Source: Hypanus sabinus (lineage: Eukaryota). Taken from it: 64,000 bases of DNA. The stretch spans positions 53,816,001-53,880,000 of the forward strand of contig NC_082708.1 of the NCBI RefSeq assembly GCF_030144855.1, in the 5' to 3' direction. The notes under the pieces are model-generated. The model ran no database searches. It saw only the letters and a program-made list of their open reading frames with translations, and was not told where the DNA came from. Shown piece after piece: positions 1 through 46,835 of the stretch. The position numbers and the translations under genes were made by a program. Numbering within the stretch: the stretch's first letter is position 1; each line of letters opens with the position of its first letter.

Positions 1-770
1 CTGCAGACTTTTTATTTGTTATGGGTAAGGATACACTTTTTAAAATCTAGGACTTCTGCCTTGCCACTCTTCCATAAATATCCTTTTTGTGTACAGTCTT
101 TGTTACTGTGGAGCCAGGAACTTCACCTCTAGTTGCAACCACCTACTTCTGTAGCTCAGAGTGACTGTTGGCATCACAGTAACCTCTCTTAAAAGTATCA
201 TTCTTCTCTGGTGACTAGCTTTAGAAGGGCAGCCTGAACTCGGCAGTTTGGCTGTGGTTTCATACTTTTTCCACTTTGTCATGATGGACTGTATACTCAG
301 AGGAATGCATCTGAAATGGGCTTGTACCCTTCCCCAGATTTGTGCTTCTCTATTATCATTTCCCCGACTTGTCTTGAAAACGCTTATATCTGCATTTTGA
401 CTTGGTCTATTGAAAATCTACCATACTATTATAACTTACAGAGAGAGGAGGGTATTTGTTTGTATGAATTCATTGAAAACAGTTGATCTGCCAATTTTCT
501 ACATCAACAAATTGGGTGAGCTACAGTAATATAATGCACTCCAAAGAAGTTAGCGTAGTAAATAGGGGATGAATAGTTTTTCTGTGTCATAATTTTTAAG
601 TAAATTGTTAACAGGTTTTGGAATTTCTTAATTTGATATTATGCACAATGTTTGTAAATTAGCTCAGAAAATCCTACTTCAATACATCTTAAATTTAGAA
701 AATGAGACTGTAAAAAGTGAAAATACTTGTGGGGCCTGAGTGTATTTTTTTTAAAAAAGGCATTGAATAC
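1..770 (-). mobile_element. Degenerate Tc1-family DNA transposon (partial; runs off the window)
   Basis: Reverse complement of 56-180 aligns by eye with the Tc1 copy at 19690-19820 (GGxATTTATGGAAGAGTGGCAAGG); decayed terminal-like sequence near 730-770. Confidence 0.7.
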
Positions 771-2783
771 AATGAACTAAATGACTATGCTAAACAAATA
801 TGCATTTTAATACACATTAAGATTTCTTGCATGACTTGTTTTACATCCAATGTTTAACAAATTTTGGCAGTGATTCAGTTTCACTTTTCCCTATACAAGT
901 TCCATTAATTAAGAGCTTGCTAACTATAAAGCAGTACTTGGAAAACATCACCATGCCTCAACTAAATCAAAACCACATCATTACAAATACTAATTTCACA
1001 GCACAGAAGATTCATAAACTATAATCAGTATTAAATTTTAGCTTGAAATGCTCCAAAAATGAATTAGTTATTTAAAATGTGTATCTATTGGATTAACCAG
1101 TGTTCTCAATCAGGAGGCTGGATAATCGTTGCAAGCCATTAAACTTAAGTTATGTTTTCCATTATTAGCTAAGATGCCAACAAAATTCACTGTTAAGTAA
1201 TGTGACAACAATTGCATTAGTGGAGCATTTATACTCTGCATCAAAAATGCAATTTAGTACCAAATTATTTTACTTCAAGTATGGAAAGCTTTGCAATGTT
1301 ATGTGCATTGAAGGGGGAAGCAACATTGATGTTAGAATTGCGGGTATTTACTCAAAACCTAACCATGCTTGTACTCATGAACTCTAAAAAGCAGAAGTTC
1401 CAGCTGCTTATAGAGCTTAAAAGCAACTTGAACATGTACAGAAGTGAGTCTCTGGTGATGAAATTAAAGGACAAGAATACTTTTGAAAGAATGCCCATGG
1501 TGCTTGTTTAAGCATAGGCTTTCACACATTTGTTTTCTACATGTACAAGAATGTTGTATAACTTCAAACTTGAGTGAAAAAAAATTGACATGCAGAGACT
1601 GTTGTTTAAGTGCCCTCAGATATGTGATGAAAGCCACTCTACTTTTTCTTCTATCTACTGTACTATGAATTGTAACTGCACTTAAGCAAGGCATTACAGA
1701 AGAGGCAAACAAATGCTGTCATTAAAATAAACAAACACTCAATATTGACTTCAGTATTAGAAACCTCAATAGCTTCATAGTTTAATACGATTCTATGGAT
1801 AAAGATTCAGAAAATGAAACTATGCTGGCATTGACACCAGGAATTGATTGTCCACTCCAGGTACGAGGGCAATACAAGGAAAGATTAAATTAAGATATGA
1901 TATTACATGCATTCCATGAACAGAAAATTGTTGTGGCATTTTCATTTTACTTGTATGATAACCATAGCAACACCAACAAATCACAGCTAGTTAAAAGGCA
2001 AAATATCAATCAGTGATGAGAGCCATATTGTTAGCTGCTACAGTAGGAAAAGTTTGGAACATATAACCAGATGGACAACACTAATAAGACAGAGCTATCA
2101 TATGCTTTTGGGAGAACCATGGGAAAGTAACTAGCAAGGCAGATGATACCTTGAGGAAAGCAAATACAACCAATGAACCTGACTTATGGACATCACATGG
2201 AAGGGACAACACATGGAAATAATGAGCAAATGAAGTGTGTGGTGCACCTAAATAGCTAGTTTATTGGCAGAACCTTCTAGAAGGTGATGAGCTGAAGCAG
2301 GCACATGGAGAGGTAGTGGTAAATACAAGCAATGCTAGGAAGAGGCAGAAGTGAGAAAAACAAAAAAAGCAGAGATTCTGAGATGGTAGATTCACAGAAA
2401 GTACCAGTACACAAGATAGTTTCAGCAATCTGTCAGTATGATAGTATTCTACAATAATTATCAAATACAAAGAGCATTAGTGTATTGATTGGGCGATCTC
2501 TAATGGCATACATGGGGTGACCTAAAACTACCAGTGTAAAGGAAAAAACATTTGCATTATAAGTTGCTTTGAACTCTCTCAAAATACATGGCTAACGAGT
2601 TAAGATGTCTCAGTGCAGCCATTTCTACCCATCAGCCACCCTTAAAAACATGCTCAACGTTTTTCAAAAAGCCAAACAAAAAATTAAAATACATGCAGAA
2701 GTTACTGTGTTGTGGTAGTATATGCTTTGAAAAATGCCACTGCAGAATCATCCTACAATTCAGATACAAAATACCAGAAATAC

Positions 2784-2861
2784 CTTTATATTCACACCAT
2801 GGGATAGATGTGCTTGTCCAAAAGGCAGATGGATTAGATTTGAAAAGACTAAAATTAAACC
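2784..2861 (-). CDS. RANBP2: RANBP2 cassette exon in intron 20 (78 nt, phase 1-1): [26 protein letters not shown]
   Basis: Acceptor cttatttttag|GG and donor AAAG|gtattt; length divisible by 3; in frame with exon 20; resembles a recalled mammalian RANBP2/RGPD isoform peptide [18 protein letters not shown]. Confidence 0.82.
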
Positions 2862-5800
2862 CTAAAAATAAGAATGGGCACATAAGTGTCTAGTTGTAAA
2901 GAGGTAGCCAAAGGATCCTTTCCAAGCAAAGCACAAATTACTGAACGTTAGCTACTGACTCTTACCATTTATTCAAATCAAATGAAAAATTATATCCACC
3001 CCATTTAAATATACTCATAAATCAGCATTCATAACACATTAATAACCCAAAGAAATCATAATTAATACCATGCTGTTAAATGGTAATACCAGTATTTCTG
3101 AATGATAAAATGAAAATGCTTTGCCTTTATGACTACTGTTAAAATTTAAAATTCCCAGTGTTCAGATTTCCCCTTGTGCCTACCTAGGACTTCTCTAATC
3201 CAATCAGATTCTTGAGATTCTAATTTAATTTTTCTTGTGGACAATACAAGTTTATTCAATCATTGTGCCTGCAAGTAACTACTAGACTTCAGAATTGCAA
3301 GAAAGGCAGTTCCATAAAGAGAAACTGGATTATACTACACTAGGTACGTGCATTTCCTGTAGTCATCCTACCAAAAATAATGAATTTCCAGAAAAAAAAA
3401 TGAACAATGACATCAGAATTTCAGTGCAAGAGATTGAAACTTTATAATGGAAAAGCAGATCAATTTTGTTTTAAATCGAAAGGAACTCTGCAGAAAATTC
3501 TTTCATGTGATAAAATATGCATTAAGAATGCCTTTAACAAAGAAAATTGTTTGGAAATTCTTTTGAACAATGGTTGTGAAAACTTTTCTACAGAGTGGAC
3601 TTAAAAAGCACTCAGCCAGAAGTGATGACGCCAAGTTTGAGAAGTTATCAGAAAGGGAATACTGTGTGGCTAGGGTGGTTTTCCTTCTAAGAGCAGAAGG
3701 ATAATTGTGGAAGAATATCTAGCAAGAAATAGGTGTACAAAGGAGACAATGTGATCAAAGGCTGTTTTCAGTTTTCAGATAGAGTGACTTACCAGGTTGT
3801 GGTCTATTAAATAGAGTCTGCTTGGATTTATCTTCAGTTGCAAAAGCAGTTTCCACACATTCTGCTGTTGAATTTGAAAACAAGTTGGCCATTGACGAGA
3901 GAGATGCAGCTGCTTTACTAAAATCAAATCCACCATTAGCAACATCCTGCGGTTTATTCTTTACAGCAAAGGAGTCACTTTGCACTTGGTCTTTTAACGT
4001 TGAGCCTGTACTTTTAAAACTGAAACCAAAGGATCCAGCTGCTGAATTACCTAAAGTGAAGGGTCTCTCATTCTCACTGCTGAAAATGGTTTTCATAGAA
4101 GCACATCCAAATACGAACTTTAATGGAGGTGCTTCTGTCAAGCTAGTATTCGCTGACTTGACCGCACTATTTGAAATTGAAACATTACTATTTGTTTGCT
4201 CTGTCGTTTCCTTAATAGTCTCCTCTATCATTGACACTGAAATCTTACAAGGAGATTCCCTTGGGGTAGTTTCCCTTGAAGACAATGGTGTAACTAATGT
4301 CCCTTGTTCTTGAGCCTTCTTGGCTTCTTCAAAGAGGTCTCTGAAAGAGTTAGCAACCTCTTGTTGCTTAAAACGCACAGCTAACTGTTCCACCTTTGCC
4401 ACATCATCTGCAAAATCCATTACACTCCAAACAAAAGCTTTCTCAGTTCCTTTCATGGGCTCAATTTTTATATCTGGTGTCAGCCAGTGATTGGCACAAA
4501 TTTTCAACACCTGATCCCTTCTCATAACAATCCGAACTTTTTTGGTATCATAATTTTGTAAAATTTTCAGGTCCCCTATCCCCCTCTCTTTCCACTGGAC
4601 CATTTCCTTATCATAACGGTAAAGTTTAGCTCTGTGACAGAAGATAACTTGCTCATTTTCCTCTCCTGTTGCTACATCAATCAAATCAGGCAATGGAATA
4701 ACTGGTTCAAAATGCTGTATGTCCTTTTCTTCCTCTTGGCCAAATTCTGAGTCTTCATCTGTACCCACAGACAAACCACTCTGATTCAACTTCGGAGATT
4801 TTAATGGACTCAAACAGGGTTGGAAATTAAAATTAAAACCAGTTGCTGTATCACCAAAACGGAAAAGGTTTTTCCTCACTGGACTGCTAGTGTCAGGAGG
4901 TCCATACCCAGTGCTAGATACACTAGTATCCAAAGCTTCTTCACGTAGATCATAATTATCCCACTCCAAAGTAGGTCCAGTACTTTCAGAATGTGGTTTA
5001 ATTACTAAACCAGATGTACTGCTGCTTTCAGATACAGAACTCAATACATTCCCTTCATCCTGCAAGCTTCCTTTCTCATCTTTCAAGAAGTGTTTCAGGT
5101 CTTTTAAACCATTTTTCATTTCTTCAGCTTTCTGTATTAGCCGAGCAGTCTTACCATTGTCCAATAGTTTATGAGGTGTCTGTAGTGGTATATCCAACAG
5201 CAATCTTTGGAATTCCTCAAATTTTTCTTTAAACTCTTCAGCTAATTCAGGTGTTTTAAACTTTGCTGCTAGCTGCTCTGCCTTTGCCTCACCATCTGAA
5301 AAGTCACTAGCCAACCACATCCATGCCCTATCAGAGCCCATTAAGGGTTTGAGATTCATTGTTGTAGTTATCCAGTGATTTGCGCACACTTTTAAAACTT
5401 GCTCTCGACGCATTATTACTCGAAGCCGGCCATTGGCTTTGTTTTGGAGAACTTTGAGGTTTCCAACACCCCGCTCCTTCCACTGGCTGCTTTCTGAATC
5501 AAATCTAAATAGCTTAACTCTCTGTGAATAAAGTACCAATTCATCTTCTTCACCAGTAATCAGATCTACTTTTTCAGGCATAAGAACCACAGGTTCAAAA
5601 TGAATATTATCCCCCTCTTCAGTTTTGTACAGTTCATCATCTTCATCAGCAGAAGTAGCTGTTGTACATGTTGAAAACAATTGCTGACCTACTCCTTCAA
5701 AACCTTTGAAATTAGGATCTTTAGAGCCAAATTGAAAACCTTTATCTGCAGACTTTGCTAAATCAGCAAAAGTAGAGACATTCATATCATTACCTAGAAT

Positions 5801-8800
5801 AAAATCTTGACTTTGGTTTGAAATGGCAGAGTTTGGAACTTGATCTTTGTCTGATTGTGCAGTGATTCTGTCCCTCTCCTTTTGCTCAGCAAAGGCTTTT
5901 AAGAAGAGTGCAGCTGATCCTTGCTGACTAGTTTTTTTAGCAGAATCTTTGCATGTATCTGGCAAACCAAATGTGAAGTTACCACCTGAACTAGCTGAAG
6001 AAAATGTAAATGCAGGACTGGAAAACTGTCTTGAAGACTGAGATGATGATGGCTCAACCTTGAAGCCTGCAGTATTGTTTACACTACCATTCCCAAATTT
6101 AAAACTACTTGCTGGGAAGTTAACTTTAAATCCAAATTCAGGTGCATCTGATTTGGGGCAAGCTCGGCCAAGAGCAAATGTTGTGGTAGAAGCTGCTGAA
6201 ACTCCAACTGTTTTATTGCTTGCTCTGGGTGCCTGACAAGCAACACAGTTTGTCTTTTCTGGTTCATTTCTCACACAACATGAATCACAATCCCATTGTC
6301 CTTCCTTTCTGGAAAATAATTCTGCCAAGCTTTGTGTGGCGGGTTTCTCACTGGATGCTGGTTGGGCAACTGTAGTAACAACTGGAATTTTGTCATTGGG
6401 TTTCGATGCCTGACAGCTCATACATTTTGTCACTTCCAAATTTCTCTGCAAAGTGCTGCAATCACACTGTCCTTTTCTGGCAAATATTCCTTGTAATGTG
6501 TCTTGTGTCAAAGTAGATGTTCTCTCACTGAAGGCTGACTGGCCAAATGAAGTAACAATAGGAAGTTTGCCATTAGGTTTGGGTGCCTGAAAGGTTGCAG
6601 ATTTTGCATCAGTATTGGTAAGTTTGTCACCAAACCCTCTTGGCTTGGTAAAAGCTGTAATCTTCTCAGGTCCTTCAACTGCACTTCCATTTTGCACTAA
6701 TTTTGCAACTTCCATTTCTGAAGCAAAAGGTAAACTTTGTTTTCTATTAGTGACATTAGGGCTTTGGCAAGATTGACACATGGAATCTGAAGCAGTGTTT
6801 CGTACAAAACACGTGCTGCAATCCCACTCACCAGGTTTCTTAAAAAACTTTGCAGCAAATCCAGAGTCTTCAGTAGACTTAACAGTACCCAAGTTCACCA
6901 TATCAGACTTCAACTTGATTCCCATTTTCTGTTCTTGACCAAACAAACTGCTCAGTTTTAATTCATCATCTTTAACCAAGTTTTGTGCTTCTTCAAATTT
7001 GGCTTTGAACAATGCAGCCTCATCTGCTGTTTTAAAGCGAACAGCAAGTTGCTCAAATACTTGCTTTTCATCAGAATAATCCAAGGCACACCAGACCCAT
7101 GATTTATCAGATCCTTTATTTGGTTTCAACTTCATATCTGCAGTAATATAATGGTTTGCACAGATCTTAAGAACCTGATCTCGCCTCATTAGAAGCCGGA
7201 TTTTCCTGGAAGTCCTGTGTTGCAGTAGTTTTATGTACCCAATGCCTCGTTCCTTCCATTCTTTGGTCTCAGTGTCAAAACGGAAGAGTTTAGCTCTGTT
7301 GGAAAACAATAGTTCCTCATCTTCTTCTCCTGTTTTTACATCTACTTTGTCAGGAAGTGGTACAACTGGGTCAAAATGTGGCCCATCATCTTCATCAGGT
7401 ACACTGTCGCGATCACTTTCACCATCCTTGTCTTCAGCATTATCTCCACAAGTTGCTGGCTTGCCAGTATCCTTGAAACCAAATACCTGATTACTCAATA
7501 CATTGAATGTATTCTTATTTTGTCTTTGAGGCAAAACGTCATTAAAAGAATGCTGCTCTCCTTGGGAAAAGGGACTCTCTCGACTGTGCATTCCTTGTGT
7601 AGACATTTGCCCCAGAATCAAATCATTTTTTATAGGCCTTCCAGCAGTTAAAATTCCTAGGAGACTATCACTAGCAGATGATGGTGGTGCCTGGGCTTTC
7701 ATCTGTGGTGATGAGAATGTAAAATCTCCCTCATTATTCTTGAAATTTGAGTTAAATTTAAATGTTGTTGCTGGTGTTGAGTGCAATAGTCCAGTAACCA
7801 ATGAATTCTTTGCAGCTTCATTTTGTATTTGTTGATTAGGTGTTCCAAATCGTCCTTTAGTTTCCATAGGTTTCATAGGTTGCATTCCTACAGGCGGCTT
7901 AGTAAAGTAACCAGGCTCTGGCAAAGGTGGGTTTGTGCTTGTTTGTGGAATGCCATGGTTGTAGTAGTCTTCACCAAATGGAGAAAGCAATCCAGTTGCA
8001 GGAGATTCAAAATGCAATTGTGGCCCATACATATCCTGTGAATAAATACATGCCGAATTGGTTTGAATAGGAGGTGTGTGAGCTTGCTGCTGATATCCAT
8101 ACACAGACTGTTGCGGTGGAATCCGACCAATTCCATATGTAGGAGTCTGCTTCAAAACAAAAAAAAACACAATGTTAATCTGTCAATACATATACTTTTC
8201 CAAATAGAGAATATCACTTTGGTTACCTTGGTTGGAGCCACGTTGGTTGCTGCTCTAAGATGATATTGGGAATTGTACATTGGAGATTGATTGTAGAACA
8301 CAGTTGATCCTGAAGTAGCAACTGAGAGAATGTGTTTTAGTTTGTATCTTCATAAAATATCTCACTGACAAATATTAATGATTCACTCTATTATGGCATT
8401 CAAATTGCTTCAGGTAAAGTATAGTTTAAACTATTTGGCAAAGCTAAAACAATAATCTGAAGGCCGAGTAAATTAAATTAGAAGCCCTTGAGCCTGTTGC
8501 TGCCATTACTGGGTAATGTTTCTTAGTAAAAATTCTTTACAGTTTGCCTGAACAATCAAAAAATGAATTACAACTAAATTTATTTAAAAATATGAATGGC
8601 ATGCTATCACAAATTAAAAACTCAGTTGTAAACTACATTCAAGTGTTATGACCACAAAATTTGTTACAATTTAAATAATTATTTAAAGCCAAGTTATATT
8701 GCTAATTGAACATAAACAGATCAAGCAACACACAAGAAATGCTGGTGGAACGCAGCAGGCCAGGCAGCATCTATAGGGAGAAGCGCTGTCAATGTTTCGG

Positions 8801-11800
8801 GCCAAGACCCTTCATCAGAACCAACGAAGTCCTGACGAAGGGTCTCGGCCCGAAACGTTGACAGCGCTTCTCCCTATATATGCTGCCTGGCCTGCTGGTT
8901 TCCACCAGCATTTTGTGTGTGTTGCTTAAATTTCTAGCATCTACAGATTTCCTCGTGTTTGCCTTTTAAATAAACAGATCAATCGAGTTCTGTATTGGTA
9001 AATTACTTCAATACAAGATAAAAATGCCATTAACTTTATTTGCTGCATGGAACGGAAGTTCCAATGCCACCCATCAAAGCAGTTTACAGATGTCACTCCT
9101 TTATTATGAGACACTCACTTAATTGTTTGCTTCATAATTACCTGTTAAAGGTGGCCCCTGAAAACTTTGTACTCCTTGATAATTTTCTGTATGGGGATCA
9201 CAACTATCTGCTTGCCACTGGGGTCGTGGGGATTCTGTTGAACTTGAATTATTCATTTTCAGCTCACGGACTTCACCCTGGTAATATTTTGAATAAATAG
9301 CAAATTGTATCTGCTCTAGTTGTTTTAAAATGTACATATTTTAATGCATCAGACAAAAACATTAATAAGTTTCAAATCAGTTACTCAAAATGCATTTCCT
9401 AAGGAACCAAAATTCTCAGCACAACTTCACTACAGACTTAAATTACACATTCCCCCACCAACTCCCTCCCCCACCAACTCCCGCCCCCCCCATAAATTCT
9501 GAAAGTTAAACTATCCCAACACAAGGTATTACCAGTCAAATTTACATGGATCTTCTACTGCAAATTTTATCTATGCCTCAACTGGAATGACAAGCTTTTC
9601 ATTTGCTTTGACAGGAATCCGACATTCCCTGACATTCTTTAGAGTGCTTCTTGCACAAAAGAATCACGATGTATAAAGTTTGCATGCTGTCAGAAAACAA
9701 CATGCATATTTTGCATGCTGTTTAGGAGATCACAATGCTTTAAATGTTAAGCAACATGAAGTGCAGCAAAAAAAAGATACAAGAATCAGTGAAGATAACT
9801 TTTTTAACCAATTATTCCACAAACTCTTCATCAATCTACGCAAATTTCTACTTTTCTGAAGATGACATACCTTTAGCTGTTCCACTTGCTGGCAAAGCAT
9901 CTGAAGCAAATGTTTTTGATCTTCAGCCCAGCGTGGAGGAGTCTTTGGAGACCACTGAAGAAAAATCCCAAGTTAAACTCTCAAAAAATTTTCCTTCCTT
10001 TTGAAGTATGAACTAAACAATTCATGGAAGTTATTTCCAGCATTTAAAAACCCCTATTCAAAGTATTACCTCCCTCATGTGTAACAAACTTCTTAAATTC
10101 TTAAATATGTGCTATTTCATATTACTCACAATTTGGCCTAGGCAGAGCTAGCCCACCACTCCTAGTAACCCCACTTACTTCCCAATAATCTTTCCACTCT
10201 CACGTGCCCATCAACTCCATCACAATTATCCCACCTATACTCAGTAACTTACAGCAGCCAAGTAACATACCAAATAACTTCAGGATGTCAGAGAAAATCA
10301 AAACATCTAGGGAAAATGTCTCAGACACCATTTGCTGTCAGTATTAAAAACAGATGCTGGAGAAGTAGCACTACCTGTTAAGTCACTGCACTGCCAATGA
10401 AATTGTAAATCTTGCTTAATCATTACAATTTCTGTTTAAGGCAAAGCATTAATAAGGAATAGCTTCCAACAGATTAAGTGCCTCAGTAAATAAGTTCGTG
10501 ATCAGTGCAAAAGCAATCTTTGCTTTCCCGTATGCACCTGAAGTCCAATGCCACAAACTGTAATAGCATCAAGCTAACATTAACACAAAGATATTGCAGC
10601 TCGGAGCAGCATTCGGAGTTCCAAATCCGACATCATCTATAAGGAATCTATACATTCTTCCCATGAAATGTATTGATTTTCTCTGTTTCCTCCAGTTTCC
10701 TCACAATCCAAAGATGTGCTGGTTATTGGTAATTGTAAATGGACCCAATTAGGTTAGGTTTAAAAAATTGGGGCAGGGTGGAGGTAGCTGGGCAGTGCAG
10801 CTCAAAGTGCCACACTGCATCTCTAAATAAATTATAAATACAACATCACTAATATTGAAGCATGTCCTTCACCCCAAGTACATAACTAAAATGAATAGGG
10901 ATAGAAAGAATTGAGTCAGGAATGGCATTACACTTATTAGACGAGACTATAAATTTTCATATTAAATCTATGAAGTTAAAGTTTACAAATTTATTTGTTG
11001 CAGACTTAAAACAATTTGAAAAGAATTTACCTTGTAACTTTTGGTTGGCGATGGACTAAGCTTTACTGGAGATAGGGTAGAATGTTTCACTGGAGTCAAC
11101 TCTGGAGAAGTGCTGTTTTCAGCTATCTGGGAAAATGTGTTGTCTTCTTCACCCTGGTCAAGCTCATCATTATTATATTCTTGAAGATGCTGACTTACCA
11201 ATTCTAGCATTTCTTTTACTGCATCTAAAGGTACAGGCAACTGGGGATGAAAGGTTGCATAAATAATTAAACCAAAGGTTTAGGATGACCAAGGGGGAAT
11301 TGAAAATATTTAAATATTTTCACAGCAACAGTGGAAATTATGCAAGACACAGCTTTTCACTGTACCTCAGTAAGACAATAAATCAATTTTAATTTTAAAT
11401 TAGAACACAGAGACAAGCAAGTAAATCACAATAACATGAAGTCTTGGAAATTGGATGAAGATTAGGAATGACCTCCTGTTGTGCAATATTCAGAAAGAGA
11501 GATGAAAACTACAGAAACATGCATATGCAAAAGAAGAATCTAAATGTAATCTGTAAAGATATGACTGCAAACAGCAGGCAGCAAGACGAGATGATGCCAA
11601 TGGACTATGCTCTATTTTTGATTGATCAAAAAACGGACAAGAGTTGTTTTGGAAGAGTAGCTTATCAAATACTGAAATTAATTTGAAACATTCTAAAACA
11701 GCAATTGAGATAACCAATTAATTTGCTTTAGTGGCACTGGATGGAAAAGTTTCCACTTTAAATGGACTGATCAGGGAAAACTAATTTACATTTAACTGTT

Positions 11801-23800: not shown

Positions 23801-26800
23801 TCGCTAGTAAAAATTAAGAAAGAATTTAAAGAAAATTAAAACAACTTGCATATACTTTATAAATAAAGTGTTGGAAAAAACATAAGTATCTGAAAGGAAG
23901 GGTGCAAATACCCAAGATCAAATAAATAAGCCTTGCAACAGGCTTACAAAGAGGGAAACGTAGAACTTTAGGACAAGTTAACCTTTTATCCATCATTTTG
24001 CACAAGAGAACACCAATATTTTAATATCTTAAGTTGCAACTCTGAAGAGATAAGAAATAGCAGTCATAACTGCTAGCTCAGAATAATATACTGTCAGGAT
24101 TAAGAAAAATGAAATGCAAGACAGACAACCAAACACTAATGCAGAGTTGGTTTAAAGAGCAACCTCTTATTATTTTGCTTCTTAATTTTTCTGAACTATC
24201 CCCAATTCATTATCAATTTATTTAGGATATTTAGAGAGTCAGCTGGACTCCGTAAATTTCATAGAAAGTAATAACGGAGCGTGATCAGAGATAGCTATAA
24301 TATCATAGTTACAACCGATTACCATTGGAATAAAACAAGAGTCTAAATAATCAATTCTTGAATAAGAGTGATGATTAAATTGGATTAAATTGATTTATCA
24401 TACTCCAGTAGCCTCAGTGGTTACCAATAATCAAAGATCTCCCTTTTTTCGCCTATTTCGGGGCACTAGACAGGGATGTCCTCTTAGTCCATTACTATTT
24501 AACATTGCCTTAGAACCTTTGGCAATTGCCATCAGACAATCACAGGATATTTTGGGTATTAATCGTGGGACAGATATTCATAAGTTATCTTTGTATGCAG
24601 ATGATTTATTACTATTCATTTCTAACCCGGAGAAATCCATCCCAGCAGTTTTATCATTATTGGCTCAATTTAGTGAGTTTTCTGGGTATAAGTTAAATCT
24701 TAATAAAAGTGAATTGTTTCCATTAAATAAACGGGTCCCAATTTATGGAAATTTACCTTTTAAATTAGTTAATGACTCTTTTACTTATTTAGGGATCAAA
24801 ATCACAAAGAACCATAAAGATTTGTTTGGATTTAATTTTTTACCCTTAATTGATCAGATTAAAGGTTTGTTTACTAGGTGGTCACCTTTGTCTCTATCTC
24901 TAATAGGCAGGATTAATGCTATTAAGATGGTTATTTTACCTAAGTTTTTATATATTTTTCAAGCGATACCAATTTTTATCCCGAAATCTTTTTTTACTAA
25001 TGTTGACTCTAAAATTTCTTCATATATATGGCAGTATAAAAATCCCAGGTTAGGTAAAACATATTTACAGAAGACTAAAAAGGAAGGCGGGTTAGCATTA
25101 CCTAATTTCAGATTTTACTATTGGGCAGTTAATATTAGATATTTGTTATGTTGGTTGAAAGATGGGGGTGGATCTTTTGGCCCTTGTTGGGTGAGTTTAG
25201 AAACTAAATCGGTATCAGCTTATGCTTTGGGTTCTATTTTAGGGACTTCTCTCCCTTTTGCTCTTTCTAAATTGCCGAAACGAATCGACAACCCGATAGT
25301 TAAACATACATTGCGTATATGGTTTCAATTTCGGAGATTTTTTGGGTTGACTCAATTCGTTTTAAATAGTCCTATTGTATCTAATTGTTTTTTTCACCCT
25401 TCCATTATAGATCAAGCTTATTCAGCTTGGAAAACTAAGGGATTACTAAGATTTTCTGATTTATTTTTAGATAATTGTTTCATGTCTTTTGAACAATTAT
25501 CCAACAGATATAACTTGCCGAGATTTCATTTTTTTAGATATTTACAGATTAGACATTTTTTAAGTTCTGTACTCTCTATGTTTCCAAATTTTGTGCCTTC
25601 AGATACTTTGGAGAGTTTATTTGAATTAGACCCTTTTCAAAAAGGGCTTATTTCAAAACTTTATAATATAATTATGAAGATACGTTCAGAGCCCCTTTAT
25701 AAGACTAAACAGGATTGGGAAAGAGAGCTTAGTTTTAGTATTTCTAGTGAGAATTGGGATAGAATTCTTCAATTAGTTAATACATCATCGTTATGTGCCA
25801 AACATTCACTAATACAATTTAAGGTTGTACATAGGGCCCATATGTCCAAGGATAAATTAGCTCATTTTTACTCTCATATAAGTCCTATTTGTGATAGATG
25901 TCATTCTGAAATTGCGTCTTTAACTCACATGTTTTGGTCGTGTTCATTTTTGGAGAAATATTGGAAAGATATTTTTGATATTATATCTGCGGTTTTGAAT
26001 ATTGATTTACAACCTCATCCTATTACCGCAATTTTTGGTTTACCAATGTTAGATTCACAGCATTTATCTTCTTCAGCCCGTCGAATGATTGCATTTCTAA
26101 CTTTGATGGCTAGAAGATCTATATTGTTGAATTGGAAAGAAATTGATCCTCCCACTGTATTTAATTGGTTCTCTCAAACTATGTTATGTTTAAATTTAGA
26201 AAAAATTAGAAGTGGTACTTTTGAGACCTATTAAATTTGAAAAGTTATGGAGACCATTTATTCAACATTTTCATATGATGTAATATGACCCTTTGCCAAG
26301 TACATTTGATTTCCCAGCTTTTAGCTTATGGATTTTGAGAGGACCGGAAGTGACGGCATTGATGAATACTTATTTTTGTGAGATATTATAAACAGCCCAC
26401 TTTTTTTTTCCCTTCTCTTTTGTTTGTTTTTTTTTTCTTTTATATTACTTATTAGCTATAGTTATTAGATTAGATTAGTTAGTTCTGCATTATATAAATT
26501 TTTTTTTGTTTTTTTTCTTTCTTTTTTCTGTTTTTTTTATATTATACATTATGAAATATTTAGATTTACTATGTCCATACATATATCTTATGGCTTATGT
26601 CTTGGTAAACTCATTTATATTGTAACTATTATGTATGTTTTTTTTTATATGTAATGGAATGTGTATGTTGGTAATTTCTTTATCAATATATCATCTGTAT
26701 TCTGTCCATATTATTAATATTAATAAAAAGATTTAGAAAGAAAAAAAGAAAGAAAGGATATTTAGCACACAAAACTCTCCACCATAAATGATGATGCGAA

Positions 26801-35800: not shown

Positions 35801-36425
35801 TCATAGTAGAGTTTTGCAAACAAAAATCCTTTGAGTGATTTCTAAAACAAAGTAAAACAAATTACAACCAAAAGCTTTTATAAAACTTCAAAGTTCGAAC
35901 TATAAAACTATTAGAGAAAATGCTTTCAATTAGCACAAATAACAGGACTATAAATAAATAAATATCTAAAAGTATTACAGCCAAGTAGTTCAAACCTTCA
36001 AAAGGAAGTAAAAACAATTGTGGAAGGTAGCTTTAGGCATTTAAACCGTAACTCATCACAACTAAAATGTAAGTTCAAAATAATTTATAGACATAAATAT
36101 ACCGCCAAAAATCTGATAGAGGCGCTGCCTCCAGATCGAAGAATTGCGATAACTTACAACAATTGCAATTGCTGTAATGACCACAACTCTCTCCTGCAGT
36201 AAAAGAAACAGCGTGGTGCTGAAAGCACGACCGAACTCCGGCCTGCCTGCCAACCAGAAAGAAGGCCCAACAACCCAATCCACTGTCGGCGGCCCTTCCA
36301 CACCCTTGAGTTAGTCACCGGCACCTCACTTGATGGGTCGAGACACTCACCTCACGGGGCGACAGAGGCTTGAAGCCCTGCAATGAAGCGATATACTTCT
36401 CTACCTCCACCTTACTGCGCATCAT
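2784..36425 (-). CDS. RANBP2: RANBP2/Nup358 gene, 5' portion (exons 1-20 plus a cassette exon); 3' exons (IR/M E3 region, RBD4, cyclophilin) lie outside the window
   Basis: 20 exons with GT-AG boundaries splice into one open frame starting [17 protein letters not shown]...[22 protein letters not shown]. Exon sizes (68,112,231,146,182,176,124,162,138,84,136,95) match my recollection of human RANBP2. Exon 20 carries three RanBP1-type domains and RanBP2 zinc fingers. Confidence 0.98.
3793..8146 (-). CDS. RANBP2: RANBP2 giant exon 20 (4354 nt): FG region, RBD1 (~6980-7380), zinc fingers (~6225-6840), RBD2 (~5200-5605), kinesin/BicD2-binding region, RBD3 (~4310-4715)
   Basis: Within the 1471-aa ORF; three HFxPVxxxP...KTGEEDE...WKERGxG...KxCANH repeats; acceptor aagcag|ACT, donor CCTG|gtaagt. 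Confidence 0.98.
8227..8321 (-). CDS. RANBP2: RANBP2 exon 19 (95 nt)
   Basis: ctcag|(V)[31 protein letters not shown]|gtaacc. Confidence 0.96.
8725..8969. mobile_element. Penelope-derived palindromic insertion with 13-bp TSD and hammerhead-like cores
   Basis: ~100-bp inverted arms (8723-8820 and 8829-8927); ATAAACAGATCAA duplicated at 8712-8724 and 8970-8982; shares the caaaatgctggaggaact... terminus with the Penelope at 55265+. Confidence 0.85.
9142..9277 (-). CDS. RANBP2: RANBP2 exon 18 (136 nt)
   Basis: accag|[13 protein letters not shown]...[13 protein letters not shown]|gtaatt. Confidence 0.95.
9871..9954 (-). CDS. RANBP2: RANBP2 exon 17 (84 nt)
   Basis: ttcag|[28 protein letters not shown]|gtatgt. 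Confidence 0.96.
10180..10397 (-). mobile_element. Degenerate V-SINE-like element
   Basis: Reverse complement resembles a SINE central domain (ttttccctagatgttttgattttctctgacatcc). Confidence 0.45.
10585..10840 (+). mobile_element. V-SINE-like (HE1-type) element
   Basis: tRNA-like head, central ctccagtttcctcacaatccaaagatgtg, tail catctctaaataaa. Confidence 0.65.
11031..11240 (-). CDS. RANBP2: RANBP2 exon 16 (210 nt)
   Basis: cccag|[12 protein letters not shown]...[19 protein letters not shown]|gtaaat. Confidence 0.94.
12253..12402 (-). CDS. RANBP2: RANBP2 exon 15 (150 nt)
   Basis: gtcag|[38 protein letters not shown]...TTIDS|gtaagt. Confidence 0.94.
12484..12621 (-). CDS. RANBP2: RANBP2 exon 14 (138 nt)
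   Basis: ttttag|[46 protein letters not shown]|gtaagt. Confidence 0.96.
13293..13454 (-). CDS. RANBP2: RANBP2 exon 13 (162 nt)
   Basis: tatag|[24 protein letters not shown]...[16 protein letters not shown]|gtaact. Confidence 0.96.
14336..14459 (-). CDS. RANBP2: RANBP2 exon 12 (124 nt)
   Basis: ttttag|[41 protein letters not shown]|gtaagt. Confidence 0.96.
14543..14718 (-). CDS. RANBP2: RANBP2 exon 11 (176 nt)
   Basis: ttcag|[15 protein letters not shown]...[19 protein letters not shown]|gtaaat. Confidence 0.96.
14795..14976 (-). CDS. RANBP2: RANBP2 exon 10 (182 nt)
   Basis: tttag|[18 protein letters not shown]...[19 protein letters not shown]|gtatga. Confidence 0.96.
15341..15547 (-). CDS. 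RANBP2: RANBP2 exon 9 (207 nt)
   Basis: tgtag|(G)[27 protein letters not shown]...LVKCDD|gtaaga. Confidence 0.94.
15971..17496 (+). mobile_element. Solo LTR interrupted by a Rex1 LINE
   Basis: TGTAGAA...TGTTACA termini; ACTG target duplication at 15967-15970 and 17497-17500. Confidence 0.7.
16407..17273 (-). mobile_element. Rex1/Babar-type LINE, 5'-truncated
   Basis: [23 protein letters not shown]; FQFLGV...[14 protein letters not shown]...[10 protein letters not shown]; AATAAA plus short-repeat tail. Confidence 0.9.
17600..18660 (+). mobile_element. Degenerate RTE-type LINE fragment
   Basis: Decayed RT motifs (FDKVR; [15 protein letters not shown]); C-terminal [15 protein letters not shown]. 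Confidence 0.7.
19000..19517 (+). mobile_element. Degenerate CR1 LINE fragment
   Basis: [13 protein letters not shown] (~DFxKAFD); YINDL. Confidence 0.6.
19518..19690. mobile_element. One end of a Tigger/pogo-like element
   Basis: Reverse-complement match to 35100-35260. Confidence 0.6.
19690..20643 (+). mobile_element. Tc1-family transposon, 5'-truncated
   Basis: [29 protein letters not shown] transposase motifs; right end caaggcactgTA. Confidence 0.85.
20992..21082 (-). CDS. RANBP2: RANBP2 exon 8 (91 nt)
   Basis: tgcag|[30 protein letters not shown]|gtaatc. Confidence 0.94.
21200..21395 (-). CDS. RANBP2: RANBP2 exon 7 (196 nt)
   Basis: ttttag|[10 protein letters not shown]...[19 protein letters not shown]...ALCYLIAYQ|gtatgt. 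Confidence 0.94.
22206..22351 (-). CDS. RANBP2: RANBP2 exon 6 (146 nt)
   Basis: tgcag|[48 protein letters not shown]|gtaatc. Confidence 0.93.
22754..22984 (-). CDS. RANBP2: RANBP2 exon 5 (231 nt)
   Basis: ctgaag|[23 protein letters not shown]...[13 protein letters not shown]|gtatat; AAG acceptor. Confidence 0.93.
23648..23803 (-). CDS. RANBP2: RANBP2 exon 4 (156 nt)
   Basis: ctag|[21 protein letters not shown]...[15 protein letters not shown]|gtacgc. Confidence 0.95.
24235..26754 (+). mobile_element. Young L1 LINE, 5'-truncated with a 5' inversion; 11-bp TSD; antisense in RANBP2 intron 3
   Basis: 614-aa uninterrupted ORF2 C-terminal half ([14 protein letters not shown], CxxC...HxxxxC); AATAAA plus (GAAA)n tail; AGGATATTTAG at 24224-24234 and 26755-26765; inverted endonuclease segment at 24235-24373. 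Confidence 0.95.
27690..28420 (+). mobile_element. Tigger/pogo non-autonomous transposon (contains an assembly gap)
   Basis: TIR AGTCGGCCCTCCTTATCTGCGAG at both ends with TA flanks; CENP-B-like HTH remnant [22 protein letters not shown]. Confidence 0.9.
28196..28338. other. Assembly gap (143 N)
   Basis: Run of n. Confidence 1.
28880..29540 (+). mobile_element. Rex1/Babar LINE 3' fragment
   Basis: SSFKFLSV...[12 protein letters not shown]; tail taaacctgattcagat. Confidence 0.75.
30139..30250 (-). CDS. RANBP2: RANBP2 exon 3 (112 nt, TPR region)
   Basis: tgcag|[37 protein letters not shown]|gtatgg. Confidence 0.96.
31100..33170 (+). mobile_element. Rex1/Babar LINE 3' fragment split by a Tc1 insertion
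   Basis: SSFKFL; [14 protein letters not shown]; 3' tail resumes at 33064-33170 (aataaacccgattc). Confidence 0.7.
31577..33061 (+). mobile_element. Full-length but decayed Tc1 transposon (transposase pseudogene 31976-32927)
   Basis: TIRs GTACTGTGCAAAAGTCTTAGG and CCTAAGACTTTTGCACAATACTG with TA flanks; [19 protein letters not shown]...QQDNDTKH...[12 protein letters not shown]. Confidence 0.92.
33560..34058 (+). repeat. Composite repeat built from Tc1-TIR pieces and a Rex1-type tail
   Basis: TIR-like sequence at 33600-33630; gataaacctgattctg; paired TIRs at 34003-34052. Confidence 0.55.
34507..35260. mobile_element. Tigger/pogo-like non-autonomous transposon
   Basis: TACAGTT...AACTGTA ends; repeated TTAATTGGG subterminal motifs. 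Confidence 0.6.
35774..35841 (-). CDS. RANBP2: RANBP2 exon 2 (68 nt)
   Basis: ttttag|[22 protein letters not shown]|gtaaaa. Confidence 0.96.
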
Positions 36426-44241: not shown

Positions 44242-46835
44242 TGCCCCTCTCACCGCCAGCCAGATGAGGTCTTGGTGCCTGTTGGTGAGGTCTGGCGATG
44301 AGGCATTTTGCCAGATGAACTGGATGGTCTGCTCAGGGAACCACTCCACTGTGTCCATCTCATCCTTCTCCTGCAGTGCCTGCAGGACCTTACATGCTGA
44401 CCACTGCCTGATGGCCCTGTGGTCAAAGGCGTTGACCTGAAAGAACTTCTCTACGAAGGACAGGTATGCCAGCAATGACCAGCTGACAAGGGTGTTGCGC
44501 GGGAAAGGGGCCAGACCCATCCTTTTTAGCCAGGGCGACAGGTAGAATCTGGCATGTAGTGGTACTTGGTGCCCACGTACCTGGGATCCACACACAACCT
44601 GATGCAGCCACACACGAAGCTGGCCATCAGGGTGAGGGCAACATTGGAGACGTTTTTGCCCCCGTTGTCCAGGGGCTTGTGCATGGTGGTCCATCTAACC
44701 CGCTCCATCTTGGATCCCCAGACGAATCTGAAGATGGCGGGGACTGGCCACACCTGCGCCAAGTACAGCAGCCCTGAGAGCACCTCACACCTGATGACTA
44801 GGTTCTTGCCCGCTATCGATAGGAAGCGCCCTCCCCACAGCCCCAGTTTCTGTTTCACCTTGGCAGTCCGCTCCTGCCAGTTCTTGTTGCACGCCTCAGC
44901 CCCTCTGAACCAGATCCCCAACACCTTCAGGTGATCAGCCCTGATGGTGAAGGGGACGCTGGATCGGTCTGGCCAATTGCCAAAGAGCATGGTTTCGCTC
45001 TTCGTGCGGTTGACCCAGGCCCCTGACGTCTGGTCTAACTGTTCGCAGATGCTGATCAGCCTGCGAACTGACCTCGGATTGGAGAAGAAGACGGTGACGT
45101 CGTCCATGTACAGGGAGGTTTTGACTTGTGTCCCTCCACTGCCTGGCAGCGTCACCCCTCTTATGCCCCCATCCCTCCTGATGGCTTCAGCAAAGGGTTC
45201 CATGCAGCACACGAACAAGACGGGAGAGAGGGCAGCCCTGCCTGACTCTAGACCTGATGGGGAAGCTGTCTGTTTCCCACCCGTTGACCCGGACTGTGCT
45301 ACAGATGTCCATGTAGAGCAGTTTGATCCAATTCCAGATTCCCTCCCCAAATCCCATTTTGGAGAGTATGTGTGCGATATCCTGTCGAAGGCTTTCTCCT
45401 GGTCCAAGCTGACCAGGCAGGCGTCCACCCCCCTGTCCTGCACGAAGGCGATGGTGTCCCTCAACAGCATGAGGCTGTCTGAGATCTTCCTGCCCGGTAC
45501 AGCATAGGTATGGTCCGGGTGGATCCCCTGCTCTAGTGCAGACTTGACCCTGTTGGCGATAGCCTTGGACAGGATCTTGTAGTCCACATTCAGGAGTGAG
45601 GTGGGCCTCCAATTTGTAATGTCTTCCCTCTCCCCCTTCTCCTTATAGATGAGGGTGATGATGCCCTTCTGCATGGATTTGGACATGTTGCCTGCCAGAA
45701 GCGTAGTGTTGTACATTTCCAGCAGGTCGGGGGCCACCTGGTTCCACAGAGCCAAATACAACTCGACCGGTAAGCCGTCGCTTCCGGGAGTCTTACCTGA
45801 CTCAAAGGAATGGACGGAGTCAATCAGCACCTCCAGGGTCAGTGGCTGCTCCAGACTCTCCCGCTTGTCGTCGTCTAAGACCTGCGTGATAGACGACAGG
45901 AAGTTGCGGGAGGTTGTGGAGTCTGTGGCCTTTTCTCCGTACAGACTGGCATAGAAGGACCTGCAGATCCTCAGTATGTCTGTCTGCGAGGACGCGACTG
46001 AGCCGTCCTCTTCCTTAAGGTTGTGGATCACAGAGCTCCCCCTGTGCACCTTTTGGAAGAAGAATTGTGAGCACGTCTCGTCCTGCTCCATGGTTTGGAC
46101 CCTCGATCGGAAGATGATCTTGGAGGTCTCAGTGGCAAAGTGCTGAGCCTGCTGGCCCTTCACCTCCTGTAGTTCCTCCCTGACATCCACCCCCCTTGAC
46201 TGCAGAAGGAGGAGTTGCTGCAACTCTGTCTGGAGTTTACGCAGTTCCCTCTGCCCCTGCCTTGCTTTCTGGATACCCTTGTGGATGAAGAACCTCTTGA
46301 TGTTCTCCTTGGTGACTTCCCACCAGTGAACCAGGGAATCAAAGAAGGCTTTCAAGGTTCTCCAACCTGTGTACTCCTTCTCTAGTTTCTCGATGTTCTC
46401 TGGGGTCAGCAGCTTGACATTCAGCTTCCATGTCCCCTTCTCTGCCTTCTGGTCCTCCAGCAGGTGGCAGGTGGCTCGCAGGAGGCAGTGGTCAGAGAAG
46501 AGCACTGGCGTGATGTCGGTGGTTCTGACTGTGAGGGGCTCTGACAGGATGAGGAAGTCAATCCGGGAATGGGCTGAACCGTCCGATCGTGTCCAGGTGG
46601 CTTGCGGCTGAGCTGTCCGATTGTGTCCAGGTGGCTTGCGGCTGAGCTCCACCTGTGGGGGTGCCAAAGGCATCGCGCAGCTTGGCTGTCTTTACCGTAT
46701 CCGTCAGGAGTCTGGAGGTACTGTCCAGCCTGCCATCAGCGCTGCCGGATTATCCAGCCGCATCAGTGGTGCAGTTGAAGTCTCCGGCCAGAACGACCGG
46801 CCGGGATGTCACCAGCAGTGGTGGGAGCTGCCATG
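44242..46835 (-). mobile_element. Tx1-type (L1 clade) LINE ORF2 fragment, truncated at both ends
   Basis: AGDFNC, SRIDF, SDH, KTPGSDGLP, DQEKAFD, YMDD, WLAVRGAL; GC-rich; frameshifts, including a 34-bp tandem duplication at 46581-46648. Confidence 0.92.

What the first reader, a model, noticed from the sequence alone, without database searches (positions are those of the whole stretch)
2784..2861. Hidden 78-nt FG-like cassette exon of RANBP2, apparently conserved from cartilaginous fish to mammals
Seen: a phase-1/phase-1 exon with good splice sites that adds [26 protein letters not shown] right after the giant exon, just upstream of where the SUMO-E3 IR region normally follows. A TGCATG (plus-strand CATGCA 2692-2697) and a GCATG (2649-2653) lie just downstream in the intron. 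Knowledge: downstream RBFOX sites typically promote inclusion in neurons and muscle; I recall the peptide [18 protein letters not shown] in non-canonical mammalian RANBP2/RGPD isoforms. Inference: an ancient tissue-regulated module that adds an FxF/aromatic linear motif to Nup358.
Basis: partly seen in the sequence, partly recalled or inferred. Interest (0 to 1): 0.7.

Follow-up and report, generated by a model that had tools for sequence, protein, structure and literature searches.

The report
Known muscle-specific RANBP2 78-nt exon
The 78-base stretch is the stingray copy of a real alternative exon of the nuclear-pore gene RANBP2, conserved across jawed vertebrates, but it was described in mammalian muscle in 2018 and is in many species' gene models, so it is not a discovery.

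Summary
Window 2861..2784 (minus strand) is a 78-nt, phase 1/1, stop-free exon with AG/GT. It lies 931 nt downstream of the giant RANBP2 exon, whose donor is at 3793.

The window is Atlantic stingray (Hypanus sabinus). Its giant exon is 1453/1453 aa identical to that species' RanBP2 isoform X1.

- **Annotation.** None of the four H. sabinus RefSeq isoforms carries the exon, so it is unannotated in this genome. The identical 26-aa peptide is in isoforms X1/X2 of a sister stingray. Orthologues are in models of sharks, skate, chimaera, coelacanth, frogs, reptiles, birds, mammals, sturgeon, reedfish, eel and teleosts.
- **Literature.** Capitanchik et al. 2018 (PMC7000147) reported this muscle-specific 78-bp RanBP2 exon in rat, mouse and human. 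Zhang et al. 2020 (PMC7532667, supplement) list the mouse exon as responsive to Rbm24 knockout, with inclusion change 0.42. They also list it as responsive to Rbfox2 knockdown, with PSI change 0.24.
- **New here.** Seven genomes from six lineages all have GCAUG 88-124 nt downstream of the exon (UGCAUG in six). All seven have a weak donor without G at +5. The 18-aa core motif occurs only in RanBP2.

The peptide's function is unknown and it is not an FG repeat. Verdict: real and ancient, but already known.

The parts
2784..2861 (-). 78-nt phase 1/1 alternative cassette exon of RANBP2, encoding [26 protein letters not shown]
   Evidence: The peptide is identical to Hemitrygon akajei RanBP2 X1/X2. 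Orthologous 78-nt exons are in 6 other genomes.
2862..2878 (-). 3' splice site: AG (2863-2862) preceded by a pyrimidine-rich tract (cccattcttattttt)
   Evidence: ATTCTTATTTTTAG is identical in Callorhinchus.
2776..2783 (-). Weak 5' splice site AAG|gtatttct, with no G at +5
   Evidence: The same weak type (gtattt, gtatag or gtactc) is in all seven genomes.
2692..2697 (-). UGCAUG (RBFOX-type element) 88 nt downstream of the donor
   Evidence: It lies in the block TAACTnCTGCATG, which aligns with Callorhinchus. GCATG is at +104 to +124 in the other six genomes.
2649..2653 (-). Second GCAUG, 131 nt downstream of the donor
   Evidence: Its conservation was not shown.
3793..8152 (-). Giant RANBP2 exon (zinc fingers, RanBD2-3, FG region). 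Its 3' end and donor CTG|GTAAGT are at 3793. The 5' end is approximate.
   Evidence: It is 1453/1453 aa identical to Hypanus sabinus RanBP2 X1.

Best explanation
This is the Atlantic stingray orthologue of the known alternative 78-nt exon of RANBP2/Nup358. That exon is included in striated muscle and myotubes in mammals.

**How inclusion most likely works.** The exon has a good acceptor but a weak donor lacking G at +5, so it is skipped by default. It is included when muscle-enriched splicing activators bind the downstream intron. The likeliest activator is an RBFOX protein at the conserved (U)GCAUG about 90-125 nt downstream. In mammals RBM24 contributes as well.

**What inclusion does.** It inserts 26 residues between the FG-rich end of the giant exon and the IR1 SUMO-E3 module, without changing the frame. 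The first 18 residues are almost invariant across jawed vertebrates. They sit in a disordered stretch and occur in no other protein. They are therefore most likely a short linear motif that binds a conserved, still unknown partner.

**Shown.** Exon structure, orthology, deep conservation, alternative use in annotated models of relatives, and motif conservation are shown here. Mammalian muscle specificity and the Rbfox2/Rbm24 responses come from the papers.

**Inferred.** Tissue pattern and RBFOX dependence in the stingray, and any protein function, are inferred.
For: **Structure and frame.**

**Species.** The window's giant exon is 100% identical to H. sabinus RanBP2 X1.

**Orthology.**
- The identical peptide is spliced RPQP|G...EYK|VEDED in Hemitrygon X1/X2.
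- Orthologues are in Mobula, Amblyraja, Callorhinchus, four shark genera and Latimeria, each with skip isoforms as well.
- Xenopus Nup358 in PDB entry 7VOP carries it.
- 70 of 108 further cluster representatives carry it.

**Literature.**
- A muscle-specific 78-bp RanBP2 exon between a RanBD and the E3 domain was validated by RT-PCR in C2C12 myotubes. Its junction siRNA encodes PESK|AQ, the end of the rodent cassette.
- The mouse event is chr10:58481318-58481396, lying after a 4663-nt exon. Reported changes are Rbm24 KO 0.42, C2C12 differentiation 0.31 and Rbfox2 KD 0.24.

**Regulatory signals.**
- GCATG lies at +88 to +124 in 7 of 7 genomes, and as TGCATG in 6 of 7.
- The chance of GCATG in the first 150 nt is 0.11-0.18 per genome. 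The joint chance is about 5e-5 for five lineages, and lower with Callorhinchus.
- All seven donors lack G at +5.
- Same-codon identity in the cassette exceeds that of the giant exon. For stingray against Cariama it is 15/17 against a 46% background, p = 4e-4.

**Motif.**
- A profile of the cassette finds only 11 proteins among 1.84 billion. All are RanBP2 or ORF calls over the genomic exon.
- AlphaFold gives pLDDT 54-61 with no stable fold.
Against: - No expression data for the stingray could be examined. None of its four RefSeq isoforms includes the exon.
- The Rbfox2 and Rbm24 values in the mouse supplement are absolute values from RNA-seq comparisons, not direct binding tests.
- The intron alignment between distant classes is poor. 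In tetrapods and ray-finned fishes the GCAUG is conserved in position band, not in an alignable block.
- The position band was noticed after looking.
- Synonymous-site excess is significant only in some species pairs.
- Isoform-specific knockdown in C2C12 reduced the isoform by only 8% and did not change myogenic index. No function has been demonstrated.
Confidence: 0.85

Rival explanations
1. Inclusion is driven mainly by RBM24 or other muscle factors such as MBNL or CELF. On this reading the conserved GCAUG is secondary or coincidental.
For: - In mouse the Rbm24 knockout effect (0.42) is larger than the Rbfox2 knockdown effect (0.24).
- GTGTG, the RBM24-type element from my own knowledge, lies 18-23 nt downstream of the donor in the bird and both teleosts.
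Against: - The stingray and Callorhinchus have no GTGTG within 250 nt downstream. In Equus the nearest is at +242 and in Amia at +146.
- GCATG is at +88 to +124 in all seven genomes.
- The two regulators are reported to share targets, so they need not exclude each other.
Confidence: 0.25
2. The peptide works as an extra FG-type repeat that binds nuclear transport receptors such as importin-beta or CRM1, lengthening the FG region of Nup358 in muscle.
For: - The cassette starts with GFNFS.
- GFxF units recur in the FG region of the same giant exon (GFQFG, GFNFNF, GFSFK, GFDFSK) and in Xenopus Nup358 (SGFNFS).
- 7 of 26 residues are aromatic.
Against: - The cassette has no FG dipeptide, against 14 in the giant exon.
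- FG repeats tolerate much sequence drift. This 18-aa core is nearly invariant over the whole of jawed vertebrates, including K8, N10, P11 and W15. That fits a specific docking motif better.
Confidence: 0.15
3. The conserved element acts mainly at the RNA level, as a splicing-regulatory or structural element, and the encoded peptide is incidental.
For: - Same-codon identity is above the gene's background in several pairs.
- Intron flanks are alignable between stingray and chimaera.
Against: - The frame, the multiple-of-3 length (78 nt, 75 nt in Chiloscyllium) and the absence of stops are kept in every lineage.
- Substitutions in the core are few and conservative (F/L, N/D, S/R, S/M), while the last 8 codons vary freely.
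- Extra synonymous constraint is usual for regulated alternative exons and does not exclude a protein function.
Confidence: 0.05
4. In the stingray the sequence is an unused relic. It is conserved by descent but never spliced in, which would explain its absence from all four H. sabinus models.
For: H. sabinus isoforms X1-X4 all skip it.
Against: - The open frame, both splice sites and the downstream UGCAUG are intact.
- The peptide is 26/26 identical to the one in Hemitrygon akajei X1/X2 models and 23/26 to Mobula hypostoma X1/X2.
- Absence from a RefSeq model set is expected if little muscle RNA-seq was used.
Confidence: 0.03

Closest known systems
Muscle-specific 78-bp exon of RanBP2/Nup358 (Capitanchik et al. 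2018, Nucleus 9:410, PMC7000147; a 78-bp human exon is recorded in VastDB according to that paper)
   Same: - Same gene, and the same position after the giant exon and before the IR1 E3 exon.
- Same length (78 nt) and same frame.
- Orthologous peptide: the first 18 residues are 17/18 identical between stingray and most of the mammals sampled, including primates and horse (16/18 in the rodents).
- The paper's junction siRNA encodes the end of the rodent cassette.
   Different: - The paper covers rat, mouse and human only, and says nothing about fishes or regulatory motifs.
- Muscle specificity in the stingray is untested.
- The last 8 residues differ (IPWCEYK in the stingray, SQPESK in mammals).
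RBFOX- and RBM24-co-regulated muscle exons such as Mef2d alpha2 and Rock2 exon 28 (Singh et al. 2014 as cited in PMC7000147; Zhang et al. 2020, PMC7532667)
   Same: - The mouse Ranbp2 exon is in the published list of 23 events that respond to both Rbfox2 knockdown and Rbm24 knockout.
- A downstream intronic (U)GCAUG fits the position rule, from established knowledge, that downstream RBFOX sites promote inclusion.
   Different: - No direct binding or minigene test exists for this exon.
- The stingray lacks a nearby GUGUG.
FG repeats of nucleoporins (FxFG, GLFG)
   Same: Aromatic-rich, disordered, next to the FG region. It begins with a GFxF unit like those in the neighbouring giant exon.
   Different: It has no FG dipeptide and occurs as a single copy. 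It is far more conserved than FG spacers and repeats usually are.

Membership tests
Published muscle-specific RanBP2 78-bp cassette exon | In-frame cassette of 78 nt | tested here: met
   Window 2861..2784 is 78 nt and phase 1/1. The mouse event 58481318-58481396 is also 78 nt.
Published muscle-specific RanBP2 78-bp cassette exon | Lies between the giant exon (RanBD3/FG end) and the IR1 SUMO-E3 exon | tested here: met
   The upstream side is in the window: the giant exon ends at 3793. The downstream side comes from orthologous proteins, with EYK|VEDEDLQIIF in Hemitrygon X1 and RPQP|VEDKDLQIIF in H. sabinus X1. The IR exon itself lies outside the window.
Published muscle-specific RanBP2 78-bp cassette exon | Sequence orthology to the rodent and human exon | tested here: met
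   The cassette peptides align with 13 invariant columns, 12 of them in the cassette itself. The paper's junction siRNA reads ..PESK|AQ.., which matches the Lemmus cassette end SQPESK|AQEK; the rat model has SQPESK|AREK.
Published muscle-specific RanBP2 78-bp cassette exon | Inclusion restricted to striated muscle and myotubes | not testable with these tools
   No RNA-seq access. Known for rat and mouse only.
RBFOX-activated cassette exon | (U)GCAUG in the proximal downstream intron | tested here: met
   TGCATG at +88 and GCATG at +131.
RBFOX-activated cassette exon | The motif is conserved across species beyond chance | tested here: met
   7 of 7 genomes have GCATG at +88 to +124. The joint chance for five lineages is about 5e-5 for the first 150 nt. 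It lies in an alignable block only between stingray and chimaera.
RBFOX-activated cassette exon | Inclusion changes when RBFOX is depleted | not testable with these tools
   Published for mouse C2C12 only: Rbfox2 KD, absolute PSI change 0.24.
RBM24-dependent exon | GU-rich (GUGUG) element near the exon | tested here: not met
   There is none within 250 nt downstream or upstream in the window. It is present at +18 to +23 in the bird and both teleosts. The motif definition is from my own knowledge.
FG repeat | FG dipeptide core (FxFG, GLFG or xxFG) | tested here: not met
   0 FG in the cassette, against 14 in the giant exon.

The most novel reading that the evidence does not exclude
The nearly invariant 18-residue core ([18 protein letters not shown]) is a docking motif found only in RanBP2. 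When spliced in about 15-25 residues ahead of the IR1 SUMO-interaction motif, it recruits a conserved partner in muscle. Alternatively, it changes how the RanBP2/RanGAP1-SUMO1/Ubc9 module works. Either way muscle nuclear pores would gain a property retained since the origin of jawed vertebrates. Neither the partner nor the effect has been described.
Probability: 0.4. Interest if true: 0.55.

Novelty: already known. Interest (0 to 1): 0.22.

Why it matters
The exon is not new. It was published in 2018, its Rbfox2 and Rbm24 responsiveness sits in a 2020 supplement, and gene models of dozens of vertebrates include it.

Two smaller points remain:
- **Annotation gap.** The Atlantic stingray RefSeq set lacks an isoform that its sister species has.
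- **Open biology.** A peptide kept almost letter for letter from rays to mammals, beside the SUMO-E3 module of the largest nucleoporin and used mainly in muscle, still has no known partner or function. The conservation data collected here are a reasonable argument for someone in the field to test it. They include the invariant core, the weak donor, the conserved downstream GCAUG and the motif's restriction to RanBP2.

Tried and rejected
1. **Structure alone as evidence.** Rejected, because 59 comparable AG...GT stop-free candidates lie in the same 3.8 kb of intron.
2. **Fetching shark, frog and gecko loci.** This failed because the files were too large or the isoform was not on record.
3. **Gray whale locus.** It has an assembly gap exactly over the intron. 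I left it unfilled and did not use it.
4. **Word-index search limited to 40 residues around the cassette.** It returned only 5 candidates, so its count says nothing about breadth. The 261-residue region search did better.
5. **Logan teleost protein that seemed to fuse the giant exon and cassette.** This is an ORF-caller read-through of a 290-nt in-frame, stop-free intron with normal GT...AG, not intron loss.
6. **AlphaFold model of the cassette plus IR1 (162 aa, 14-row alignment).** Mean pLDDT was 56 and the cassette scored 54-61 with two one-turn helices. That is too weak to support any fold or contact, so I ran no fold search.
7. **PDB sequence search.** It found only the Xenopus Nup358 sequence of 7VOP. 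Whether that segment is modelled in the map was not checked.
8. **Full multi-class intron alignment.** It was too diverged to place the GCAUGs in one column.
9. **Cyclostomes and invertebrates.** No cassette-bearing protein turned up in the profile search. Representatives at 50% identity may simply be skip isoforms, so absence is not shown.
10. **Singh et al. 2014.** The paper is not held. The Rbfox2 value is quoted second-hand from Zhang et al. 2020.

Full report
**1. What is in the sequence**

On the minus strand the giant RANBP2 exon is open from about 8152 to 3793. It ends ...[10 protein letters not shown] plus one G, followed by a strong donor, CTG|GTAAGT.

After 931 nt of intron comes a pyrimidine tract and AG (2863-2862). 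A 78-nt exon follows (2861..2784), then GT (2783-2782). Read in phase 1 it gives [26 protein letters not shown] with one base left over, so the frame is kept whether the exon is in or out.

TGCATG lies at 2697..2692 (+88 from the donor) and GCATG at 2653..2649 (+131).

The next coding exon (IR1) is not in the window. tblastn with a full-length shark RanBP2 places exon 1 near 36425, the giant exon at 8143-3764 and the cassette at 2862-2785 (88% identity). It finds nothing from the IR region.

Exon-like structure alone proves nothing here. The same stretch of intron holds 59 AG...GT, multiple-of-3, stop-free phase-1 candidates.

**2. Whose genome, and is the exon annotated**

The giant exon is 1453/1453 residues identical to Hypanus sabinus RanBP2 isoform X1. 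It is 98.5% identical to Hemitrygon akajei and 94% to Mobula. This agrees with other notes of this scan that call the genome Atlantic stingray.

The four H. sabinus isoforms in the protein cluster (X1-X4) all join RPQP directly to VEDKDLQIIF. They skip the cassette.

In the sister stingray, Hemitrygon akajei, isoforms X1 and X2 read [40 protein letters not shown]. The cassette is 26/26 identical to the window's peptide, and X3 and X4 skip it.

**3. How widely it occurs**

Isoforms with and without the cassette are annotated in these groups:

| Group | Species |
|---|---|
| Rays and skate | Mobula hypostoma, Amblyraja radiata |
| Chimaera | Callorhinchus milii |
| Sharks | Pristiophorus, two Chiloscyllium species, Mustelus |
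| Coelacanth | Latimeria |
| Birds | passerines |

- The first search had already shown the cassette in rat, chicken, zebra, chimpanzee, a bat and a lemming. A variant, GLDFRLFKDNPMAFWTST, appeared in teleosts.
- A search scored on the region around the cassette added 70 cassette-bearing cluster representatives out of 108. These are lizards, a snake, a turtle, a frog, many mammals, many birds, sturgeon, paddlefish, reedfish, eel and a cichlid.
- The Xenopus laevis Nup358 sequence deposited with PDB entry 7VOP has the cassette at residues 2476-2507.
- Genomic copies in a teleost (Xenoophorus), a second teleost from a Logan contig, bowfin, a bird (Cariama), a zebra and the elephant shark are all 78 nt with AG/GT.
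- Chiloscyllium has a 25-residue version.

The exon therefore dates at least to the common ancestor of jawed vertebrates. Nothing was learned about cyclostomes.

**4. It is already in the literature**

Capitanchik et al. [quoted passage not shown]
- It was found in rat tissue RNA-seq, is specific to myotubes in C2C12, and was confirmed by RT-PCR.
- A matching 78-bp human exon is in VastDB.
- Their siRNA against the novel exon junction translates to ...PESK|AQ..., the end of the rodent cassette peptide seen here. It is the same exon.
- Isoform-specific knockdown was weak (8%) and gave no clear phenotype.

Zhang et al. 2020 (PMC7532667) list the mouse event in their supplement.
- The event is chr10:58481318-58481396, which is 78 nt. 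The upstream exon is 4663 nt.
- Among Rbm24-knockout-sensitive exons its inclusion difference is 0.42.
- Among exons that change in C2C12 differentiation its value is 0.31.
- In their table of 23 events shared with Rbfox2 knockdown its value is 0.24.

A search for the peptide string in the paper library found nothing. No later functional study turned up.

| Feature | Stingray | Elephant shark | Cariama | Zebra | Bowfin | Xenoophorus | Logan teleost |
|---|---|---|---|---|---|---|---|
| GCATG position downstream of the donor | +88 | +105 | +108 | +112 | +124 | +124 | +123 |
| T before it (TGCATG) | yes | yes | yes | yes | no | yes | yes |
| First six intron bases | gtattt | gtattt | gtattt | gtatag | gtattt | gtactc | gtactc |

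- In local background, a 150-nt window holds GCATG with probability 0.11-0.18. That makes about 5e-5 for five independent lineages, and less once the elephant shark is added. The band was chosen after looking, so this is an order of magnitude and not a test.
- Between stingray and elephant shark the motif sits in an alignable block, TAACTnCTGCATG. The first 20 intron bases and the acceptor region also align. Across classes the introns do not align.
- No donor has G at +5, whereas the giant exon has GTAAGT. A conserved weak donor fits an exon that needs an activator.
- Codons for identical residues are more often identical in the cassette than in the giant exon of the same gene. For stingray against Cariama the count is 15/17 against 46%, p = 4e-4. 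Other pairs run from p = 0.002 to 0.12.
- GTGTG, the RBM24-type element, lies close to the donor in the bird and both teleosts. It is absent within 250 nt in both cartilaginous fishes.

**6. The peptide**

- In a 13-row alignment G1, F4, L6, F7, K8, N10, P11, A13, F14, W15, T16, S17 and Q22 are invariant. The last eight residues and the flanks vary.
- In context the core is as conserved as the PTFFCYKN core of IR1, and far more so than the end of the giant exon.
- A profile of the cassette against 1.84 billion representative proteins finds 11 sequences. Two are full-length fish RanBP2. Nine are short ORF calls over the genomic exon, one of them degenerate. The motif therefore belongs to RanBP2 alone.
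- AlphaFold on cassette plus IR1 gives pLDDT 54-61 for the cassette, against 84-89 for the known IR1 helix. It looks disordered.
- The cassette has no FG dipeptide. Its GFNFS start does resemble GFxF units in the neighbouring FG region.

My reading is a short linear docking motif inserted some 15-25 residues before the IR1 SUMO-interaction motif. The partner is unknown. This is inference only.

**7. Verdict**

The thing is already known, however. It has been published since 2018, it appears in published regulator-dependence tables, and it is annotated in many vertebrates, including cartilaginous fishes.

The only local novelty is that the Atlantic stingray annotation lacks it. The cross-vertebrate conservation of the downstream GCAUG, the weak donor and the RanBP2-only motif are modest additions that could motivate a functional study.

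Noticed in passing
window 24390-26231 (+) and 44529-46673 (-): Two long ORFs with reverse-transcriptase domains (RVT_1, E = 5e-17 and 3e-25; the first also zf-RVT). One lies antisense inside a RANBP2 intron. The other lies upstream of RANBP2 exon 1 in a GC-rich stretch. They are probably LINE-type retroelement copies.
   Followed up: partly
window about 1-330 (-): The end of the intron in the window reads like a remnant of a Tc1/mariner-type transposase. This is from reading the sequence only and was not tested.
   Followed up: no
L007 (Callorhinchus milii) and proteins P0299, P0300: The elephant shark has a further alternative exon between the cassette and the IR1 exon, encoding EIFSTKDGHSVFPTLNTHEYDMN. 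It is used with the cassette (X1) or without it (X3). No counterpart was looked for in the window.
   Followed up: no
L002 7205-7495 (Logan contig SRR30963139_33244, a teleost): The intron between the giant exon and the cassette is only about 290 nt, in frame and stop-free. A gene caller therefore read straight through it and on past the cassette's donor into the next intron, giving a 1629-aa product. This is an annotation artefact and not intron loss.
   Followed up: yes
protein P0169 (69 aa, unknown source): An ORF over a degenerate copy of the cassette (GFNFIPFKYNPMTFWISIPSSQPENK) has changes at otherwise invariant positions. It may come from a RANBP2 duplicate or pseudogene in which the exon is no longer constrained.
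   Followed up: no
proteins P0122, P0128-P0140 (Chiloscyllium): The bamboo shark cassette is 25 residues (75 nt) instead of 26. This was the only length variant seen among the cassettes whose length was checked.
   Followed up: partly
L004 21948-24446 (gray whale contig): An assembly gap covers the whole intron where the cassette should be. It was left unfilled and the locus was not used.
   Followed up: yes
window 8712-8982: An earlier first-stage note of this scan reports paired hammerhead-ribozyme cores in a Penelope-derived hairpin in a RANBP2 intron. It was not examined here.
   Followed up: no
many database entries (for example P0122, P0184, P0297): Full-length RANBP2 orthologues of sharks, lizards, birds and the elephant shark are named 'RanBP2-like and GRIP domain-containing protein 3/4/5/6'. 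The listed Pfam hits are those of RanBP2 (IR1-M, cyclophilin). These look like automatic misnomers taken from the primate RGPD genes.
   Followed up: no
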